From Macrostomum lignano (Eukaryota): 25,331 bases of DNA. Made by a program: the position numbers and the translations under genes. This document shows, one piece after another, positions 5,376-25,329 of the stretch. Where the stretch lies: positions 1 through 25,331 of the forward strand of contig NIVC01003256.1 of assembly GCA_002269645.1 (NCBI GenBank), written 5' to 3'. Under the pieces are notes generated by a model. It ran no database searches. It was given only the letters and a program-made list of their open reading frames with translations, and was not told the origin of the DNA. Each line of letters opens with the position of its first letter. Position 1 is the stretch's first letter.

Positions 5376-5980
5376 TAGGCATCTGATCTGATATGAAGCC
5401 TGAAGGTAGTAGGTTATAGGTTTTTTTATTACTAATGGCTAATTGATTGTAGGTGCTTTTATATTTTTTGCTGAATTAATCTATTTGAAAAATATTTCAG
5501 AATGGCAGATATGCTTAACATTTAGCATATTTATAACTCTTAAAAGACAATTGTTAGTTTCAAGTCTATATATGGCAACTCTGAACCAGTGCTTTAAAAA
5601 TTGTTTAGAGTTTTTTTACATGATGCAAACCATACTTTTAGTAAAACCAACCCTCAAGACACAGGTTGTACATGCCTAAAAATTAGAAATTAGACCTCGT
5701 GTTGGTTGTGCTGGTTTAGAGTCAGCAGAATGGGCAGAAATGCCTTAGTGTTATTTGGGAGATAATTTTGCTTAAGGTTGTTGTGCCATGGTGCCCACAG
5801 CTTTATTCATTTATAATAGCGTACAGTATGTACTTGACAAGATAGTAGATACGATTTCTAGCATTAGTCTATCACATATTCATTTACCTAATAGATTTCC
5901 AGGTGCAGTCTCAAACAGTCTAGCTAATGGAATACAGCGACAATCTGGCATCCAATGAGCAAGTGCAGATAGACTTTCAG

Positions 5981-6169
5981 GCATTGAACTGCACGGACTA
6001 AATGGAGCCAATGGTTCCGATGGGGCTAATGGCATCGAGACTGAAATCTATCCTGGCTTAGAGGAGCGCGAAATTGTCACTGAGTTTGGCGTCCCCCTGC
6101 GTGTCTACGTGCATAGGGGCAGCAAGTGCTGCGGATCTATCATCACCTATCACGATTTGGGAACTAATC
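5981..6169 (+). CDS. NDRG: NDRG-family protein, first recognisable coding exon (IELHGL...EEREIVTEFG...IITYHDLGTN); 5' boundary uncertain
   Basis: TYHDLGTN matches the NDRG TYHD(I/L)GxNH motif. Acceptor ttcag at 5980, donor GTTAGT at 6170 (phase 1). Confidence 0.85.
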
Positions 6170-6223: not shown

Positions 6224-6590
6224 CAGCATATATCCGCTGTACCTACAGCATACCCATCCGCCCTTACAGCATATCCATCCGTCCTTACAGCATAGCTGCA
6301 TACTCATCCGCCACTTACAACATACCCATCGGCCCTACAGCACATCCATCCGCCCTTACAGCATACCCATCCACCCCTACAGCATCTCCGTCCCTTCAGA
6401 TTCAGAATATCCGGCCCTACCTATAGCATATCTGCCCCTACCTACAGCATATCCGCCCCCTACCTACAGCATATCCGCCCCCTACCTACAGCATATCCGC
6501 CCCCTACCTACAGCATATCTGCCCCTATCTAAAGCATATCTGCCCCTACCTACAGCATATTCGCTCCAACCCTACAGCATATCCAACCTT
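6224..6590. repeat. Intronic ~21-22-bp minisatellite (cctacctacagcatatccgccc)
   Basis: Visible tandem units filling most of the NDRG intron. Confidence 0.95.
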
Positions 6591-6655: not shown

Positions 6656-6773
6656 ATCGCTCCCTATTGAGATTCTTCAATCACCCGGACATGCGCGTGA
6701 TCATGGACTACTTCACCGTCTATCATGTGTGCGCGCCTGGTCACCACGACACTGCTGGCCCGGTGGCGTCCGA
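6656..6773 (+). CDS. NDRG: NDRG exon (HRSLLRFFNHPDMRVIMDYFTVYHVCAPGHHDTAGPVAS)
   Basis: Matches the NDRG F-N-x-x-D-M...F-x-V-x-H-V-D-A-P-G segment. AG at 6654-6655, donor GTGAGT at 6774 (phase 2). Confidence 0.9.
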
Positions 6774-6831: not shown

Positions 6832-6990
6832 GCGCAACGTAGGGAGGGATTCACCCGGCCGTTTCTATTGGCAACACACACTACAAGTCGCTATTGGACA
6901 GAATAGTCGTCACGTGACTGCTCTCAGCCAATAGCGACTTACATGTGTGTGTTGCCAATAGAAACAGCCGGGTGATTCCCTAGGTTGCGC
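6832..6990. repeat. ~160-bp imperfect palindrome (MITE-like or hairpin RNA)
   Basis: Arm 6832-6897 is the near reverse complement of 6928-6990. The centre is gtCACGTGac. Confidence 0.9.
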
Positions 6991-7107: not shown

Positions 7108-7134
7108 GGTGATTGTTTCCGACGATCCTGAAGG
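7108..7134 (+). CDS. NDRG: Candidate 27-nt phase-2/2 NDRG cassette microexon ((E)VIVSDDPE(G))
   Basis: Acceptor ttattttttaaAG, donor AGG|GTGAGA. Length is a multiple of 3 with no stop in the NDRG frame. Confidence 0.55.
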
Positions 7135-7480
7135 GTGAGAAAAGTATTCTGATAATTGTTTTTTAGTCCAATATTTATTGTTGCCGTAGATGCTCGCGGC
7201 CGCTAAGCACTTGTTTATTTTAATTAAATAACGTGCACTGTCATATCTTCTCATTCTTCTGTCTGAGAGATTGTTGCGCACTGGGTGATTCATTATATTA
7301 GTTCTAACCAAAATGTATGTAGCAAAAATGTTGCTTTAAAGTTGCTCGTAATGCAAATTTTTATCGAATTTAAGGAATTTATACAAAGTCGTAATTTTGT
7401 CTGTTATAATTCTCAAATTTGTAATTATGCAACTTTTGTTCATGTTCAAATCCACAGAAATAAATCCTTGAGATAAAAGT

Positions 7481-8488
7481 AATCTACTTCAAACTGCCCT
7501 GTCATCAACAATCAACCCTTCAAACTGCTCTGTCATCAACAATCTACCCCTTAAACTGCCCTGTCATCAACAATCTACCCCTCAAACTGTCCTGTCATCA
7601 ACAATCTACCCCCCAAACTGCCCTGTCATCAACAATCAACCCTTCAAACTGCTCTGTCATAAACAATCTACCCCTCAAACTGCCCTGTCATCAACAATCT
7701 ACCCCCCCCCCAAACTGCCCTGTCATCAACAATCAACCCTTCAAACTGCTCTGTCATAAACAATCTACCCCTCAAACTGCCCTGTCATCAACAATCTACC
7801 CCTCAAACTGCCCTGTCATCAACAATCAACCCTTCAAACTGCCCTGTCATCAACAATCAACCCTTCAAACTGCCCTGTCATCAACAATCAACCCCCTCAA
7901 ACTGCCCTGTCATCAACAATCTACCCCCTCAAACTGCCCTGTCATCAACAATCTACCCCCTCAAACTGCCCTGTCATCAACAATCTACCCCCCCCCAAAC
8001 TGCCCTGTCATCAACAATCTACCCCCCCCCTCAAACTGCCCTGTCATCAACAATCTACCCCTCAAACTGTCCTGTCATCAACAATCTACCCCTCAAACTG
8101 TCCTGTCATCAACAATATACCCCTCAAACTGCCCTGTCATCAACAATCTCACCCCCCCCCCTCAAACTGCCCTGTCATCAACAATCTACCCCTCAAACTG
8201 TCCTGTCATCAACAATCTACCCCTCAAACTGTCCTGTCATCAACAATCTACCCCTCAAACTGTCCTGTCATCAACAATCTACCCCTCAAACTGTCCTGTC
8301 ATCAACAATCTACCCCTCAAACTGTTCTGTCATCAACAATCTACCCCTCAAACTGTCCTGTCATCAACAATCTACCCCTCAAACTGTTCTGTCATCAACA
8401 ATCTACCCCTCAAACTGTCCTGTCATCAACAATCTACCCCCTCAAACTGCCGTGTCGTCAATCTACCCCCCTTCAAACTGCCCTGTTA
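7481..8488. repeat. ~31-bp minisatellite (caaactgccctgtcatcaacaatctacccct, ~32 copies)
   Basis: Tandem units with a variable-length C tract. Confidence 0.98.
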
Positions 8489-8632
8489 TTATATAATAGT
8501 TTTCAATATTTTAAATGCTTCTTAAGCGTAGAGATTAGTTTTGATAAAATCATGAAAGCTTATTGCCGTGTTAAGTGACACCAACTGAATATTGGTTGAA
8601 AATGATTTTGTACTAAAGAATATTATTTTCAG

Positions 8633-8644
8633 TGATGTGTACAG
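8633..8644 (+). CDS. NDRG: Candidate 12-nt phase-2/2 NDRG microexon (TGATGTGTACAG; x-D-V-Y-R/S)
   Basis: Branch-like TACTAAA at 8611, acceptor attttcAG, donor CAG|GTAATT. In frame with no stop. Confidence 0.55.
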
Positions 8645-8839
8645 GTAATTATTGTGCTACGTCTGACAAATTATTAATAAATCATATTCGCCTGGTATAG
8701 ATAATTAAATTTGTCTAATTTATTTACTATTTGGCTAACAATTTAAACGTGGCATATTTTAATTGCTTTGTATATTTTTGTGTCATAATTAAACTACACG
8801 CACTTCAATCTGTTCTAATCATCGTGTGCATCTTTTCAG

Positions 8840-8947
8840 AGGCAGCGTTCGCGAAGGCCTCCTTGGCAGTGGGGGTGGAGCCACTGCCACTAATGGATCG
8901 GCCTCTAATACTAGCTATGCCGTCTATGGACAAGGAAGGGGCACTGT
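8840..8947 (+). CDS. NDRG: Candidate 108-nt phase-2/2 NDRG exon (GSVREGLLGSGGGATATNGSASNTSYAVYGQGRGT)
   Basis: GC-rich island in an AT-rich intron. Acceptor tcttttcAG, donor GTAAGT at 8948, 36 codons, open in the NDRG frame. Confidence 0.75.
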
Positions 8948-8969
8948 GTAAGTTGAGCCCAGATTAGTG

Positions 8970-9022
8970 TGGCTGCCCGGGGAATCGAACCCGGGGACCC
9001 TTATTTATATAGCAAGAGCTAA
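8970..9022 (-). other. tRNA-derived fragment (T-arm/B-box plus 3' CCA); probably a SINE or retroposed tRNA relic, not a full tRNA
   Basis: The minus strand reads ccccgGGTTCGATTCCccgggcagCCA. No intact D or anticodon arms. Confidence 0.45.
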
Positions 9023-9121: not shown

Positions 9122-9566
9122 CCCGTCCTACCCCAGCCTAGACCAGCTAGCCGAGATGCTGCAGTCTGTAGTTCAAGCCTACAGCATATCCTGCTTTGTT
9201 GGTGTAGGAATTGGCGCCGGCGCCAATATTTTGGCGCGCCATGCGCTGCGTCATTCGGAGCGCGTACTCGGCCTGTTCCTAGTTAACGCGAACGCTCACT
9301 CGGACAATACCTATTATAACTGGCTGTTCGCCAACTACAATGCCGAGTGGGACAGGTTGAAGCACGGGGTATTGACAATTAGCGCCCAGCGAGCCCTGGA
9401 GATGCACTGGTTTGGCCACACCGAGTCGGAGAGCGTTGATCTCATCGAGCGGTACAGGCGGCACCTGCTGAGCCTCTGCCTGCCTAATGTGGCCGGCTTC
9501 ATTCAGGCCTACAACCAGCGGCCCGACCTGGGCATTCAACGGGGCGGCAGGACTCTTCCTGTGCAG
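9122..9566 (+). CDS. NDRG: NDRG core exon (PSYPSLDQLAEML...GVGIGAGANILARHAL...RPDLGIQRGGRTLPVQ)
   Basis: YPSLDQLAEML and G-x-G-A-G-A-x-I-L (Gly in place of the hydrolase nucleophile) are NDRG hallmarks. Acceptor tacAG at 9121, donor GTATGA at 9567 (phase 0). Confidence 0.95.
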
Positions 9567-9576
9567 GTATGACGGG

Positions 9577-10029
9577 CTCAGTTGCTGGGCAAGCCTCCCA
9601 GATTCTCAGTTGCTGGGCCAGCCTCTCAGATTCTCAGTTGCTGGGCCAGCCTCCCAGATCCTCAGTTGCTGGGCCAGCCTCCCAGATCCTCAGTTGCTGG
9701 GCCAGCCTCTCAGATTCTCAGTTGCTGGGCCAGCCTCCCAGATCCTCAGTTGCTGGGCCAGCCTCCCAGATTCTCAGTTGCTGGGCCAGCCTCTCAGATT
9801 CTCAGTTGCTGGGCTAGCCTCCCAGATCCTCAGTTGCTGGGCCAGCCTCCCAGATTCTCAGTTGCTGGGCCAGCCTCTCAGATTCTCAGTTGCTGGGCCA
9901 GCCTCCCAGATCCTCAGTTGCTGGGCCAGCCTCCCAGATTCTCAGTTGCTGGGCCAGCCTCTCAGATTCTCAGTTGCTGGGCTAGCCTCCCAGATCCTCA
10001 GTTGCTGGGCCAGCCTTCCAAATCCTCAG
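9577..10029. repeat. 28-bp intronic minisatellite (ctcagttgctgggccagcct(c/t)cagat(c/t), ~16 copies)
   Basis: Tandem units between the NDRG donor at 9567 and acceptor at 10095. Confidence 0.98.
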
Positions 10030-10095: not shown

Positions 10096-10377
10096 ACATT
10101 CCTACTCACCGGGTCGCTAGGCAAATACCAAGCCAAAAGCCTGGTTGCCATGAACGCCCGATGCGATCCATCCAAAACTGAATACCTCATCGCTGACGAA
10201 GCCGACGGCATGCTGATTGAGGAGCAGCCGGACAAAGCCGCCGGCTACCTGCTGGGCCTGCTGCGCGAGACCGGCCTGGTGGCTTTCCTCACCCCGGCCA
10301 GAGTGCGCGAGCAGGCCATCCGGCTCAGCACCGACGCTCTGATGCGGCGGGACCAGTCTGGCGTCGACGTTTGTTAA
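10096..10377 (+). CDS. NDRG: NDRG last exon (TFLLTGSLG...CDPSKTEYL...[11 protein letters not shown]...VDVC*)
   Basis: Aligns with the NDRG LLVVGD...LDPTKT...QP.KLA segment. Acceptor catcAG at 10095, stop TAA at 10375-10377. Confidence 0.92.
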
Positions 10378-18900: not shown

Positions 18901-20024
18901 CACTGAAGGATTGGGGACAGGGTCACTGAATGATTGGGGACACTGAATGATTGGGGACAGGGTCACTGAATGATTGGGGTCACTGAATGATTGGGGACAG
19001 GGTCACTGAATGATTGGGGACACTGAATGATTGGGGACAGGGTCACTGAATGATTGGGGTCACTGAATGATTGGGGACAGGGTCACTGAATGATTGGGGA
19101 CAGGGTCACTGAATGATTGGGGACAGGGTCACTGAAGGATTGGGGACAGGGTCACTGAAGGATTGGGGACAGGGTCACTGAATGATTGGGGACACTGAAT
19201 GATTGGGGACAGGGTCACTGAATGATTGGGGTCACTGAATGATTGGGGACAGGGTCACTGAATGATTGGGGACACTGAATGATTGGGGACAGGGTCACTG
19301 AATGATTGGGGTCACTGAATGATTGGGGACAGGGTCACTGAATGATTGGGGACAGGGTCACTGAATGATTGGGGACAGGGTCACTGAAGGATTGGGGACA
19401 GGGTCACTGAAGGATTGGGGACAGGGTCACTGAATGATTGGGGACACTGAATGATTGGGGACAGGGTCACTGAATGATTGGGGTCACTGAATGATTGGGG
19501 ACAGGGTCACTGAATGATTGGGGACACTGAATGATTGGGGACAGGGTCACTGAATGATTGGGGTCACTGAATGATTGGGGACAGGGTCACTGAATGATTG
19601 GGGACAGGGTCACTGAAGGATTGGGGACAGGGTCACTGAATGATTGGGGACAGGGTCACTGAATGATTGGGGACAGGGTCACTGAATGATTGGGGTCACT
19701 GAATGATTGGGGACAGGGTCACTGAATGATTGGGGACAGGGTCACTGAAAGGTTGGGGACAGGGTCACTGAATGATTGGGGACAGGGTCACTGACGGATT
19801 GGGGGCAGGGTCACTGAATGATTGGGACAGGGTCACTGAAGGATTGGGGACAGGGTCACTGAATGATTGGGGACAGGGTCACTGAATGATTGGGGACAGG
19901 GTCACTGAATGATTGGGGACAGGGTCACTGAAAGGTTGGGGACAGGGTCACTGAAAGGTTGGGGACAGGGTCACTGAATGATTGGGACAGGGCCACTGAC
20001 GGATTAGGGAAAGGGTCACTGAAG
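18901..20024. repeat. 23/17-bp minisatellite (cactgaatgattggggacagggt) with a 252-bp higher-order repeat
   Basis: The variant order repeats from 18901, 19153 and 19405. Confidence 0.97.
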
Positions 20025-20600: not shown

Positions 20601-20641
20601 GACAGATAGACAGACATAGACAGACAGGCAGACAGACAGGC

Positions 20642-20678
<37 letters not shown>

Positions 20679-20742
20679 TAGACAGAAAGACACACGGACA
20701 GACAGACAGACAGACGGGCACAGACAGACAAACAGACACACG

Positions 20743-20790
<48 letters not shown>

Positions 20791-20886
20791 CACAGACAGA
20801 CAGACAGACAGGCAGACAGACATAGACAGAAAGACACACGGACAGACAGACAGACAGACGGGCACAGACAGACAAACAGACACACG

Positions 20887-20946
<60 letters not shown>

Positions 20947-20982
20947 CACGGACAGACAGACACACGGACAGACAGACACACG

Positions 20983-21014
<32 letters not shown>

Positions 21015-21050
21015 CACGGACAGACAGACAGACAGACAGACAGACACACG

Positions 21051-21089
<39 letters not shown>
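20601..21089. repeat. Interrupted (GACA)n microsatellite with an internal 144-bp duplication
   Basis: The catagacagaaagacacacgg... block occurs at 20677 and 20821. Confidence 0.97.
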
Positions 21090-21944: not shown

Positions 21945-22428
<484 letters not shown>

Positions 22429-23739: not shown

Positions 23740-24600
23740 AAACCTGAACCTGAAGCTACCCTATGTGAAGAAGAAACTTGAACCTACCCTACCTGAAGCA
23801 AATTACCAATTTAACCCGGTAAACCTGAGCCTACTAACCCCCACCCTTAAGCTATTCTCAATCTCAAATTAAAGCCGGTAAACCTGAAGCTAGACCCTAC
23901 CCTGAAGCTACCTACCCCACACTCAAGCTATTCTCAAATTAAAGCCGGTAAACCTGAAGCTACCTACCCTACCCTGAAGCTACCTACCCCACACTCAAGC
24001 TATTCTCAAATTAAAGCCGGTAAACCTGAAGCTACCTACCCCACACTCAAGCTATTCTCAAATTAAAGCCGGTAAACCTGAAGCTACCTACCCCCACCCT
24101 GAAGCTACCTACCCCCACCCTGAAGCTACCTACCCCCACCCTGAAGCTACCTACCCCCACCATGAAGCTACCTACCCCCACCTTGAAGCTACCTACCCCC
24201 ACCTTGAAGCTACCTACCCGCACTCCGAAGCTACCTACCCCCACCCTGAAGCTACCTACCCCCACCCTGAAGCTACCTACCCCCACCCTGAAGCTACCTA
24301 CCCCCACCCTGAAGCTACCTACCCGCACTGTGAAGCTACCTACCCCCACCCTGAAGCTACCTACCCTACCTGAAGCTATTCTCAAATTAAAGACGGTAAA
24401 CCAGAAGCTACCTACCCCCACCCTGAATCTACCTACCCCCACCCTGAAGCTACCTACCCTACCTGAAGCTATTCTCAAATTAAAGACGGTAAACCAGAAG
24501 CTACCTACCCCCACCCTGAATCTACCTACCCCCACCCTGAAGCTACCTACCCTACCTGAAGCTATTCTCAAATTAAAGACGGTAAACCTGAAGCTACCTA
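23740..24600. repeat. Composite minisatellite (21-bp ctgaagctacctacccccacc plus longer gctattctcaaattaaag(c/a)cggtaaac units)
   Basis: Tandem units that degenerate towards both ends. Confidence 0.96.
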
Positions 24601-25151: not shown

Positions 25152-25199
<48 letters not shown>

Positions 25200-25285
25200 G
25201 TATAGATAGGTAGATAGGATAGATAGAAGATAGATAGATAGATAGATAGATAGTGATAAATAGATAGATAGATAGATATATAGAT

Positions 25286-25329
<44 letters not shown>

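What the first reader, a model, noticed from the sequence alone, without database searches (positions are those of the whole stretch)
7108..8947. Three hidden in-frame cassette exons (27, 12, 108 nt) in one loop of the NDRG fold
Seen: the phase-2 intron between ...GPVAS and PSYPSLDQL contains three separate AG...GT-bounded segments (7108-7134, 8633-8644, 8840-8947). All are multiples of 3, all are phase 2/2, and all are stop-free in the NDRG frame. Together they insert 49 aa: EVIVSDDPEG-DVYR-GSVREGLLGSGGGATATNGSASNTSYAVYGQGRGTV. None appears in the ORF track in this frame. Known: in human NDRG1 this loop is short (APGQQDGAASFPAGYMYPSMDQL), and symmetric micro-exons underlie combinatorial splicing in flatworm MEG genes. 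Inference: a combinatorially spliced (up to 8 isoforms), acidic/Gly-Ser/Tyr surface loop grafted onto a pseudo-hydrolase, possibly a tissue-specific interaction or phosphorylation switch.
Basis: partly seen in the sequence, partly recalled or inferred. Interest (0 to 1): 0.78.

Follow-up and report, generated by a model that had tools for sequence, protein, structure and literature searches.

The report
Small inserted exons in flatworm NDRG gene
Two of the three "hidden" exons are real and already annotated in a Macrostomum lignano NDRG gene, the 12-base one is plausible but unproven, and the same intron carries mix-and-match mini-exons in nemerteans, brachiopods, annelids, molluscs and other flatworms.

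Summary
The window is a whole 25,331-nt contig of the flatworm Macrostomum lignano that carries an NDRG-family gene. The three segments exist exactly as described: AG/GT-bounded, phase 2/2, stop-free, 49 aa in total.

They are not all hidden. The 27-nt and 108-nt exons are in the contig's own GenBank protein (PAA52360.1), whose annotation is RNA-seq-derived. Both also occur in a transcript of another Macrostomum species, with mostly synonymous changes.

- **108-nt exon:** present in every available model, so it looks constitutive.
- **27-nt exon:** missing from two UniProt models. This could be alternative splicing or a prediction error.
- **12-nt exon (DVYR):** in no model. It has the best splice signals of the 43 in-frame candidates. 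It also resembles an annotated 15-nt microexon (IDIY) at the same relative place in the nemertean Tubulanus.

The intron is ancient, with the same position and phase in a marsupial NDRG2. In RefSeq it hosts combinatorial symmetric cassettes in Lineus (20 loop variants), Lingula (17) and Tubulanus (7), and alternative cassettes in molluscs and trematodes.

AlphaFold predicts a disordered loop. The insert keeps an E-x-L-L island found across phyla.

Verdict: a real feature, partly supported interpretation, a new member of a kind that is annotated elsewhere but that I did not find described in the literature.

The parts
5927..6169 (+). NDRG gene exon 1 (MEYSDNLASNEQ...DLGTN-H). In this contig it carries a 1-nt deletion in a G run near 5979-5981 that shifts the frame.
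   Evidence: tblastn of P0001. Comparison with L001 shows cagGGcattg here against cagGGGcattg there. The donor is aatc|gttagt.
6656..6773 (+). Constitutive exon encoding RSLLRFFNHPDMRVIMDYFTVYHVCAPGHHDTAGPVAS, ending in phase 2 (GA|gtgagt).
   Evidence: The Pfam Ndr and NDRG1 alignments cover it.
7108..7134 (+). 27-nt symmetric (phase 2/2) exon encoding (E)VIVSDDPE(G). It is a real exon and may be alternatively included.
   Evidence: Present in PAA52360.1, PAA79081.1 and PAA79016.1. Absent from UniProt A0A1I8HDD5 and A0A1I8HPG3. Identical in the 92-95% copy L002. The orthologue EVIVAEDPE in transcript L003 shows 4 synonymous changes and 2 conservative replacements, plus G->R at the downstream junction codon.
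8633..8644 (+). Candidate 12-nt microexon T GAT GTG TAC AG, encoding (G)DVY(R). It is unannotated, and comparative data support it only weakly.
   Evidence: It has the best splice signals of the 43 in-frame candidates and a tactaa branch-point-like site about 21 nt upstream. L002 keeps it as TGATCTGTACAG with both splice sites intact. The pattern AG|N(0-2 codons) D-[IVLM]-Y NN|GT occurs only here and at the annotated Tubulanus microexon in 382 kb searched. It is in no protein model.
8840..8947 (+). 108-nt symmetric (phase 2/2) exon encoding GSVREGLLGSGGGATATNGSASNTSYAVYGQGRGTV. It appears constitutive. Two conserved islands (xEGLL and YxVYGQGRG) flank a variable Gly/Ser/Thr-rich linker.
   Evidence: Present in every M. 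lignano model. L003 has it with a 10-aa deletion in the linker. The paralogue L004 has a 78-nt phase 2/2 homologue, GVEEKEGLL...GVPGK. LL-bearing cassettes occur in other phyla.
9122..9566 (+). Constitutive exon starting 1 nt plus 2 codons before YPSLDQL. It encodes the helix after the loop and the nucleophile-elbow remnant GVGIGAGAN.
   Evidence: The boundary is at the same position in Tubulanus, Lineus, Owenia, Opisthorchis and marsupial NDRG2.
10096..10377 (+). Last coding exon ([10 protein letters not shown]...SGVDVC, then the stop codon TAA).
7489..8486 (.). 31-bp minisatellite, about 31.5 copies, C-rich on the + strand. It fills the intron between the 27-nt exon and the 12-nt candidate.
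   Evidence: Copy number and sequence differ in L002.

Best explanation
The region is the ancient phase-2 intron that splits the loop between a beta strand (FTVYHVC) and the following helix (LDQLAEML...) of an NDRG-family pseudo-hydrolase in Macrostomum lignano.

In Spiralia this intron has become a nest of small symmetric (phase 2/2) cassette exons. They lengthen the canonical 14-residue loop into a long, disordered surface loop. The three M. lignano segments have different status.

- **108-nt exon:** an expressed exon that appears constitutive. It carries two conserved peptide islands, x-E-G-L-L and Y-x-V-Y-G-Q-G-R-G.
- **27-nt exon:** an expressed exon under purifying selection, possibly skipped in some transcripts.
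- **12-nt segment:** a plausible but unproven microexon (D-V-Y) immediately upstream of the LL exon. I put about 55% on it being used.

Shown here: exon reality, reading frame, conservation, position in the fold, and predicted disorder.

Inferred: the loop acts as a splice-tunable docking segment. The LL island would be a short linear motif for a partner protein, possibly a dileucine-type sorting or adaptor motif. The flanking mini-exons would change its context or spacing without touching the folded core.
For: **Identity**
- Pfam Ndr scores 128.5 bits against a cut-off of 23.3.
- The best PDB sequence matches are NDRG1, NDRG3 and NDRG2.
- The AlphaFold model matches NDRG3/1/2 structures with target-normalised TM-scores of 0.83-0.90.

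**Exon reality**
- The contig's own GenBank protein and two sister copies contain the 27- and 108-nt exons.
- That annotation was built from RNA-seq with StringTie/TACO at --isoform-frac 0.75 (PMC5730564).
- A 1,372-nt transcript from another Macrostomum species (SRR30276804) contains both exons, with synonymous changes predominating in the conserved parts.

**Ancient intron**
- The phase and position are identical in Tubulanus, Lineus, Owenia, Opisthorchis and a marsupial NDRG2.
- Skipping all cassettes would give exactly the canonical 14-aa loop.

**Cassette system elsewhere**
- There are 20 loop variants in Lineus, 17 in Lingula and 7 in Tubulanus.
- Molluscs show 14-aa versus 27-aa loops, and amphioxus shows 15, 30 and 64 aa.
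- Opisthorchis felineus has an alternative 33-nt cassette.

**Disorder:** pLDDT is below 50 for residues 123-157.

**LL island:** 47 of 65 distinct long inserts contain L[LI], against 16.8 +/- 3.2 in shuffles. 33 contain [DE]xxxL[LI], against 2.7 +/- 1.6. These counts are inflated by isoforms of single genes.

**12-nt exon:**
Against: - No RNA reads could be examined, so inclusion levels in M. lignano are unknown.
- The 12-nt exon is absent from every model, from the other Macrostomum transcript and from the paralogue. No counterpart was found in Lineus, Owenia or Opisthorchis.
- Its single difference between gene copies is a replacement (V->L). The surrounding intron is 94-97% identical between the copies, so that comparison has no power.
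- A splice-site pair this good within 30 nt occurs about 0.10-0.14 times per kb per strand. That gives roughly 0.07-0.1 in-frame examples expected by chance in this intron.
- The similarity to the Tubulanus microexon rests on three residues and was noticed post hoc.
- The main M. lignano gene has V, not D/E, at position -4 of the LL motif (VREGLL). It therefore does not fit the strict acidic-dileucine consensus.
- This particular contig has a frameshift in exon 1, so this copy may be an assembly duplicate or a dead allele.
Confidence: 0.8

Rival explanations
1. One reading: all three segments are independently optional cassette exons, giving up to 8 isoforms, including a skip-all form with the canonical 14-aa loop.
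For: The orthologous intron behaves this way in Tubulanus, Lineus and Lingula, where cassette-free isoforms are annotated. All three segments are phase 2/2, so any combination stays in frame. The 27-nt exon is present in some models and absent in others. The annotation pipeline discarded minor isoforms with --isoform-frac 0.75.
Against: The 108-nt exon is in all eight M. lignano models, in the other Macrostomum transcript, and as a homologue in the paralogue. No skip-all product and no DVYR-containing product is on record.
Confidence: 0.15
2. The 12-nt segment is a chance pseudo-exon, and the gene has only two inserted exons.
For: It is absent from all models and from L003. The chance expectation is about 0.07-0.1 per intron for an equally good in-frame pair. 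The change between copies is a replacement. No counterpart was found in the paralogue, Lineus, Owenia or Opisthorchis.
Against: It ranks first of the 43 in-frame candidates for splice signals and has a branch-point-like tactaa at about -21. Its splice sites are kept in L002. An annotated 15-nt microexon encoding I-D-I-Y lies in the same relative position in Tubulanus, directly before the LL cassette. The defining pattern has no other hit in 382 kb. Microexons of 12 nt are routinely missed by short-read assemblers; this last point rests on general knowledge.
Confidence: 0.45
3. Both annotated inserted exons are constitutive. The 398-aa UniProt models that lack the 27-nt exon are gene-prediction errors, so there is no alternative splicing at this locus.
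For: All three NCBI RNA-derived models and the L003 transcript include the 27-nt exon. Another UniProt model from the same set (P0002) is visibly mis-spliced, lacking PSYPSLDQLAEMLQSVVQAYS. Short exons are easily skipped by predictors; this rests on general knowledge.
Against: The models without the 27-nt exon come from at least two gene copies (P0013 and P0014 differ in sequence). Alternative cassettes at this site are the rule in related phyla, including a 33-nt cassette in the trematode Opisthorchis.
Confidence: 0.4
4. The inserted segments are not coding at all. They would be retained intron pieces or annotation artefacts of a repeat-rich, redundant assembly.
For: The contig is a 99.9% duplicate of another scaffold and has a frameshift in exon 1. 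The introns are full of minisatellites.
Against: Another species shows a codon-level conservation pattern. Homologous exons occur in the paralogue and in other flatworms. The splice sites are canonical and the frame is preserved.
Confidence: 0.02

Closest known systems
RefSeq NDRG3-like isoform sets of the nemerteans Tubulanus polymorphus (X1-X11) and Lineus longissimus (X1-X20) and the brachiopod Lingula anatina (X1-X26)
   Same: They share the same phase-2 intron in the same loop, and all cassettes are phase 2/2. They include microexons of 9-15 nt and an LL-bearing cassette (EKASLL, EREVLL). Tubulanus has a D-I-Y microexon directly before the LL cassette.
   Different: Combinatorial use is annotated there (7-20 loop variants, including a cassette-free form). 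In M. lignano only the 27-nt exon shows presence and absence, and the LL exon is in every model. The cassette sequences other than the LL island are not alignable.
Flatworm NDRG3 genes: Opisthorchis felineus CRM22_002477 (isoforms TGZ71777.1 and TGZ71778.1), Clonorchis, Schistosoma, Spirometra
   Same: They have the same intron and long inserts of 50-93 aa with an LL island and a downstream [YF]x[IV][YF]G-like island. Opisthorchis has an alternative 33-nt cassette that begins E-V, like the M. lignano 27-nt exon.
   Different: The inserts differ in length and sequence. One Schistosoma model (S. margrebowiei) has the 14-aa loop, and it may be an isoform or a misprediction. No D-x-Y microexon was found in Opisthorchis.
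Vertebrate NDRG1-4 (structures 6ZMM, 2XMQ, 6L4B)
   Same: They share the fold, the missing nucleophile serine and the intron position and phase. The skip-all product of the M. lignano gene would have the vertebrate-length 14-aa loop.
   Different: No cassette lies in this intron in the marsupial NDRG2 examined; the intron is about 180 nt. From my own knowledge, not tested here, the known vertebrate NDRG isoform differences lie at the N and C termini.
   Same: Both use symmetric small exons whose skipping keeps the frame.
   Different: MEGs are secreted proteins built almost entirely of micro-exons (my own knowledge). Here at most 2 of 8 coding exons are micro-exons, in an ordinary conserved cytosolic-type protein with no homology to MEGs.

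Membership tests
NDRG / Ndr family (PF03096), alpha/beta-hydrolase-fold pseudo-enzymes | Significant match to the Ndr profile | tested here: met
   The match scores 128.5 bits against a gathering score of 23.3, E = 2.6e-37. NDRG1, NDRG3 and NDRG2 are the best PDB sequence hits.
NDRG / Ndr family (PF03096), alpha/beta-hydrolase-fold pseudo-enzymes | NDRG-type alpha/beta-hydrolase fold | tested here: met
   The AlphaFold model has mean pLDDT 80.9 and pTM 0.81. Foldseek's top 13 hits are all NDRG1/2/3, with target-normalised TM-scores of 0.83-0.90.
NDRG / Ndr family (PF03096), alpha/beta-hydrolase-fold pseudo-enzymes | No nucleophile serine at the G-x-S-x-G elbow | tested here: met
   The sequence reads FVGVGIGAGAN and aligns to GMGTGAGAY of human NDRG1. 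The serine position holds Gly.
Spiralian NDRG loop cassette-exon module (as annotated in RefSeq) | Cassettes lie in the phase-2 intron that ends 1 nt plus 2 codons before [YF]P[STN][LM]D | tested here: met
   The window junctions are 6773| and |9122. The same position and phase are found in L005, L006, L007, L008 and L009.
Spiralian NDRG loop cassette-exon module (as annotated in RefSeq) | All cassettes are symmetric (phase 2/2, length a multiple of 3) | tested here: met
   The window has 27, 12 and 108 nt. Tubulanus has 81, 15, 60 and 42 nt, Lineus has 24, 69, 15 and 30 nt among others, and Opisthorchis has 33 nt.
Spiralian NDRG loop cassette-exon module (as annotated in RefSeq) | A cassette carrying the x-E-x-x-L-L island | tested here: met
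   VREGLL in the 108-nt exon, compared with EKEGLL, EKASLL, EREVLL, DSEGLL, ESANLL and ESEQLL elsewhere. The strict [DE]xxxL[LI] form is not met in this gene, which has V at -4.
Spiralian NDRG loop cassette-exon module (as annotated in RefSeq) | Several transcript isoforms that differ by inclusion of the cassettes | tested here: inconclusive
   Only the 27-nt exon differs between model sets: NCBI 407 aa against UniProt 398 aa. No reads were accessible.
Schistosome micro-exon genes (MEG) | Most of the coding sequence is made of short symmetric micro-exons | tested here: not met
   The coding exons in the window are 243, 118, 27, (12), 108, 445 and 282 nt.
Neural (SRRM4/eMIC-type) microexons | Length of 27 nt or less, and frame-preserving | tested here: met
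   The two small exons are 12 and 27 nt, both phase 2/2.
Neural (SRRM4/eMIC-type) microexons | UGC motif close upstream of the 3' splice site (a feature recalled from the literature) | tested here: not met
   No TGC occurs in the 40 nt before 8633 (ttggttgaaaatgattttgtactaaagaatattattttcag) or before 7108.
Neural (SRRM4/eMIC-type) microexons | Nervous-system-specific inclusion | not testable with these tools
   No expression data are available here.

The most novel reading that the evidence does not exclude
The NDRG loop intron is an ancient alternative-splicing module, shared by Spiralia and possibly by all bilaterians (amphioxus also has 15-, 30- and 64-aa variants). Its core is a cassette carrying a dileucine-type E-x-x-x-L-L motif, flanked by tiny modifier exons. 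One of these would be a conserved D-(I/V/L)-Y microexon shared by a flatworm and a nemertean. Splicing would thereby switch NDRG between partner-binding or membrane-trafficking states. I found no description of this in the literature I could search.
Probability: 0.25. Interest if true: 0.6.

Novelty: new member of a known kind. Interest (0 to 1): 0.4.

Why it matters
NDRG proteins are conserved stress, differentiation and trafficking regulators, and how they act at the molecular level is still poorly understood. This analysis points to one surface loop, split by an intron conserved from flatworms to mammals, that many spiralian lineages have turned into a splice-programmable disordered segment with a recurring LL motif.

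For M. lignano, which is a transgenic regeneration model, the result gives a concrete target that can be tested by RT-PCR. It also flags a probable missing microexon in the annotation.

Tried and rejected
1. **Homeologue comparison (window vs L002).** I used it to look for selective conservation of the 12-nt segment. The flanking intron is itself 94-97% identical, so the test has no power.
2. **Paralogue search (L004).** I searched for 27-nt and 12-nt equivalents. None had acceptable splice sites; only the 78-nt LL exon is present.
4. **Homology searches for other Macrostomum transcripts.** Only one (P0003) was found, and it has no microexon.
5. **Literature searches.** I searched for NDRG with microexon, flatworm, invertebrate splicing, and NDRG3 with the sodium pump. 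Nothing relevant turned up.
6. **Other scans.** The tRNA, Rfam and bacterial promoter/terminator scans of the region were empty or irrelevant to a eukaryotic intron.
7. **A retracted observation.** An early impression of tandem NDRG paralogues next to L001 was an artefact. The file L001.fa holds several loci.
8. **MEG-like gene architecture.** Rejected on exon sizes.
9. **SRRM4-type UGC element.** Not present.
Full report
**1. What the window is**

The 25,331-nt window is an entire contig of the Macrostomum lignano assembly GCA_002269645.1.
- The protein cluster look-up lists PAA52360.1 (BOX15_Mlig024542g1, 314 aa) on a contig of exactly this length.
- The window is 99.9% identical over 14 kb to scaffold NIVC01000654.1, which carries Mlig006737g1 (L001).
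- A third copy on NIVC01000656.1 (L002, Mlig024542g2) is 92-95% identical.

The gene belongs to the NDRG family.
- Pfam Ndr scores 128.5 bits against a cut-off of 23.3.
- Human NDRG1, NDRG3 and NDRG2 are the best solved-structure matches by sequence.
- They are also the best matches by fold, with target-normalised TM-scores of 0.83-0.90 for an AlphaFold model of mean pLDDT 80.9.
- The nucleophile elbow reads GVGIGAGAN, with glycine where a hydrolase has serine. 'Pseudo-hydrolase' is therefore correct.

The coding exons in the window are 5927-6169, 6656-6773, 7108-7134, 8840-8947, 9122-9566 and 10096-10377, plus the candidate 8633-8644.

**2. Check of the observation**

The bare criterion of AG..GT-bounded, multiple of three and stop-free is weak. 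The intron contains 560 AG..GT segments of 3-150 nt, and 43 of them meet it.

**3. The 27-nt and 108-nt segments are real exons and were already annotated**

- The contig's own GenBank protein and the two sister-copy proteins read ...GPVAS-EVIVSDDPEG-GSVREGLL...GRGTV-PSYPSLDQL.
- According to the genome paper, this annotation was derived from RNA-seq and a de novo transcriptome with StringTie and TACO. It used --isoform-frac 0.75 and later removed alternative transcripts (PMC5730564). The two exons therefore have transcript support, and minor isoforms would have been lost.
- A 1,372-nt assembled transcript from another sequencing run (SRR30276804, 74% protein identity, presumably another Macrostomum species) contains both exons.
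- In the 27-nt exon, four of the changes in that transcript are synonymous and two are conservative replacements (S->A, D->E). The junction codon with the next exon also changes (G->R).
- In the 108-nt exon, the ends (GxVRExLLGS and YAxYGQGRG) are conserved with many synonymous changes. The Gly/Ser/Thr-rich middle has a 10-aa deletion.
- The M. lignano paralogue Mlig002036g1 has a 78-nt phase 2/2 exon (GVEEKEGLL...GVPGK) in the same place.

**4. Alternative use in M. lignano**

The 108-nt exon is in every available model, so nothing suggests that it is optional. Two UniProt models of 398 aa, from two different gene copies, lack exactly the 27-nt exon. This fits exon skipping. It also fits a gene predictor missing a 27-nt exon, since a third model from the same source is visibly mis-spliced (P0002). 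I could not reach any read data.

**5. The 12-nt candidate**

No model and no transcript contains DVYR.

In its favour:
- It has the strongest splice signals in the intron: ttattttcag|...CAG|gtaatt, with tactaa about 21 nt upstream.
- Both splice sites are kept in the 92-95% copy, where the exon reads TGATCTGTACAG, giving D-L-Y.
- It resembles an annotated microexon in another phylum (section 6).

Against it:
- Splice-site pairs this good within 30 nt occur at about 0.10-0.14 per kb per strand in these loci. That gives roughly 0.07-0.1 in-frame examples expected by chance in this intron.
- The local intron is itself 94-97% identical between the copies, so conservation there says nothing.
- No counterpart was found in the paralogue, Lineus, Owenia or Opisthorchis.

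**6. The wider context**

*The intron is ancient and the canonical loop is short.*
- In NDRG proteins surveyed with HMMER and the word-index search, the loop between HVxAPG and P[ST][LM]D is 14 aa in the canonical case: 61 of 92 representative proteins, and 110 of 253 sequences (isoforms included) overall.
- Skipping all M. lignano cassettes would give HHDTAGPVASDPSY, which is exactly 14 aa.
- The intron is old. A marsupial NDRG2 has a phase-2 intron at the identical position, about 180 nt long and without a cassette.

*In Spiralia the same intron is full of symmetric cassette exons.*
- Tubulanus polymorphus has cassettes of 81, 15, 60 and 42 nt, all phase 2/2. They are used in at least 7 combinations, including none.
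- Lineus longissimus has 20 distinct loop variants of 14-100 aa. Lingula anatina has 17 variants of 14-87 aa, including a 9-nt exon.
- Molluscs alternate between 14-aa and 27-aa loops, and amphioxus has 15, 30 and 64 aa.
- Opisthorchis felineus has an alternative 33-nt cassette. Schistosomes show 14, 60 and 72 aa.

*A leucine pair recurs in the cassettes.*
- Examples are EKASLL, EREVLL, DSEGLL, ESANLL, ESEQLL, EKSVLL and EKEGLL. In this gene it is VREGLL.
- L[LI] occurs in 47 of 65 distinct long inserts, against 16.8 +/- 3.2 in shuffles.
- Isoforms of the same gene inflate these counts, and the sequences are related.

*Tubulanus has a microexon where the M. lignano candidate sits.*
- The annotated 15-nt Tubulanus microexon C ATT GAT ATA TAT GG (S-IDIY-G) lies directly upstream of the LL cassette.
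- The M. lignano candidate T GAT GTG TAC AG lies at the same relative place.
- The pattern AG|N(0-2 codons) D-[IVLM]-Y NN|GT has only four hits in 382 kb of both strands of all loci. They are the Tubulanus microexon and the M. lignano candidate in its three gene copies.
- The pattern was defined after seeing both sequences, so this is supportive, not decisive.
- I estimate about 55% that the microexon is used.

**7. Structure and likely mechanism**

AlphaFold places the insert (residues 121-166 of the 407-aa protein) between strand 101-107 and helix 172-185. pLDDT is below 50 for residues 123-157, which indicates a disordered surface loop.

Shown:
- The cassettes lengthen a surface loop without touching the core.
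- The ends of the 108-nt exon are under constraint.

Inferred:
- The loop is a docking segment.
- The LL island and the YxVYGxGRG island act as short linear motifs.
- The neighbouring mini-exons modulate their context.

A dileucine-type adaptor motif is attractive because NDRG1 is linked to vesicle recycling (my own knowledge). However, the strict [DE]xxxL[LI] consensus is not met in this gene.

**8. Comparison and novelty**

The feature is not a MEG-like gene, and its small exons lack the UGC element of SRRM4-type microexons. It is a member of a cassette-exon system that is visible in RefSeq annotations of other spiralians. In the open literature I could search, I found no description of that system.

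Two of the three exons are already in GenBank. The possible new items are the 12-nt exon and the recognition that the M. lignano insert belongs to a cross-phylum splicing hot spot.

**9. Caveat on this copy**

Exon 1 in the window has a 1-nt deletion in a G run relative to the 99.9% identical scaffold. This explains why the contig's model starts at MRVIMDY. The contig may be a redundant haplotig with an assembly error, or a dead allele. The conclusions about the exons hold for the intact copies too.

Noticed in passing
window 5979-5981 (exon 1, 5927-6169): A 1-nt deletion in a G run (cagGGcattg here, cagGGGcattg in the 99.9% identical scaffold L001) shifts the frame of exon 1. The contig's GenBank model therefore starts only at MRVIMDY (314 aa instead of 407). 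This could be an assembly indel or a dead haplotig copy.
   Followed up: partly
window 6244-6584, 7489-8486, 9577-10029: Three consecutive introns of the NDRG gene each carry a different minisatellite that is C-rich on the + strand. The units are 21/22 bp, 31 bp (31.5 copies) and 28 bp (16 copies), and they give a strong negative GC skew. Copy numbers differ in the sister copy L002.
   Followed up: partly
window 6845-6881 / 6945-6981: A 37-nt inverted repeat, 95% complementary with a 63-nt spacer, sits in the intron upstream of the 27-nt exon and is also present in L002. It looks like a MITE-like hairpin element.
   Followed up: no
window about 8967-8997: The sequence tggctgcccggggaatcgaacccggggaccc begins about 20 nt downstream of the donor of the 108-nt exon. 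It is the reverse complement of a tRNA 3' half (T arm, acceptor stem and CCA). ARAGORN and Rfam find no complete tRNA, so it is probably a tRNA-derived SINE or retro-fragment. It is also present in L002.
   Followed up: partly
window 13975; L001 18048-22265: The window and the otherwise 99.9-100% identical scaffold L001 differ by an indel of about 4.2 kb at this point.
   Followed up: no
window 18901-20023, 20601-21089, 21945-22426, 24077-24564, 25152-25329: The second half of the contig holds large tandem arrays: 23/40-bp units (25-52 copies), (GACA)n, (ACAG)n, a 21-bp array and (ATAG)n. The 18901-20023 array is much expanded in L002.
   Followed up: no
window 7270-7284: Another in-frame AG..GT segment of 15 nt would encode (E)LLRT(G), which is reminiscent of the LL motif. 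It has G at position -3 of the acceptor and a weak donor, so it is probably chance.
   Followed up: no
L009 1949-2116 (Dromiciops gliroides NDRG2): The marsupial NDRG2 gene has a phase-2 intron at exactly the same codon position as the flatworm gene. It is about 180 nt long and has no cassette, which shows that the intron predates the split between protostomes and deuterostomes.
   Followed up: yes
PDB 9kcl / 9kcm / 9kcr (fold search): Recent cryo-EM entries show human NDRG3 bound to the Na+/K+ pump. I could not check whether the loop studied here lies at that interface.
   Followed up: no
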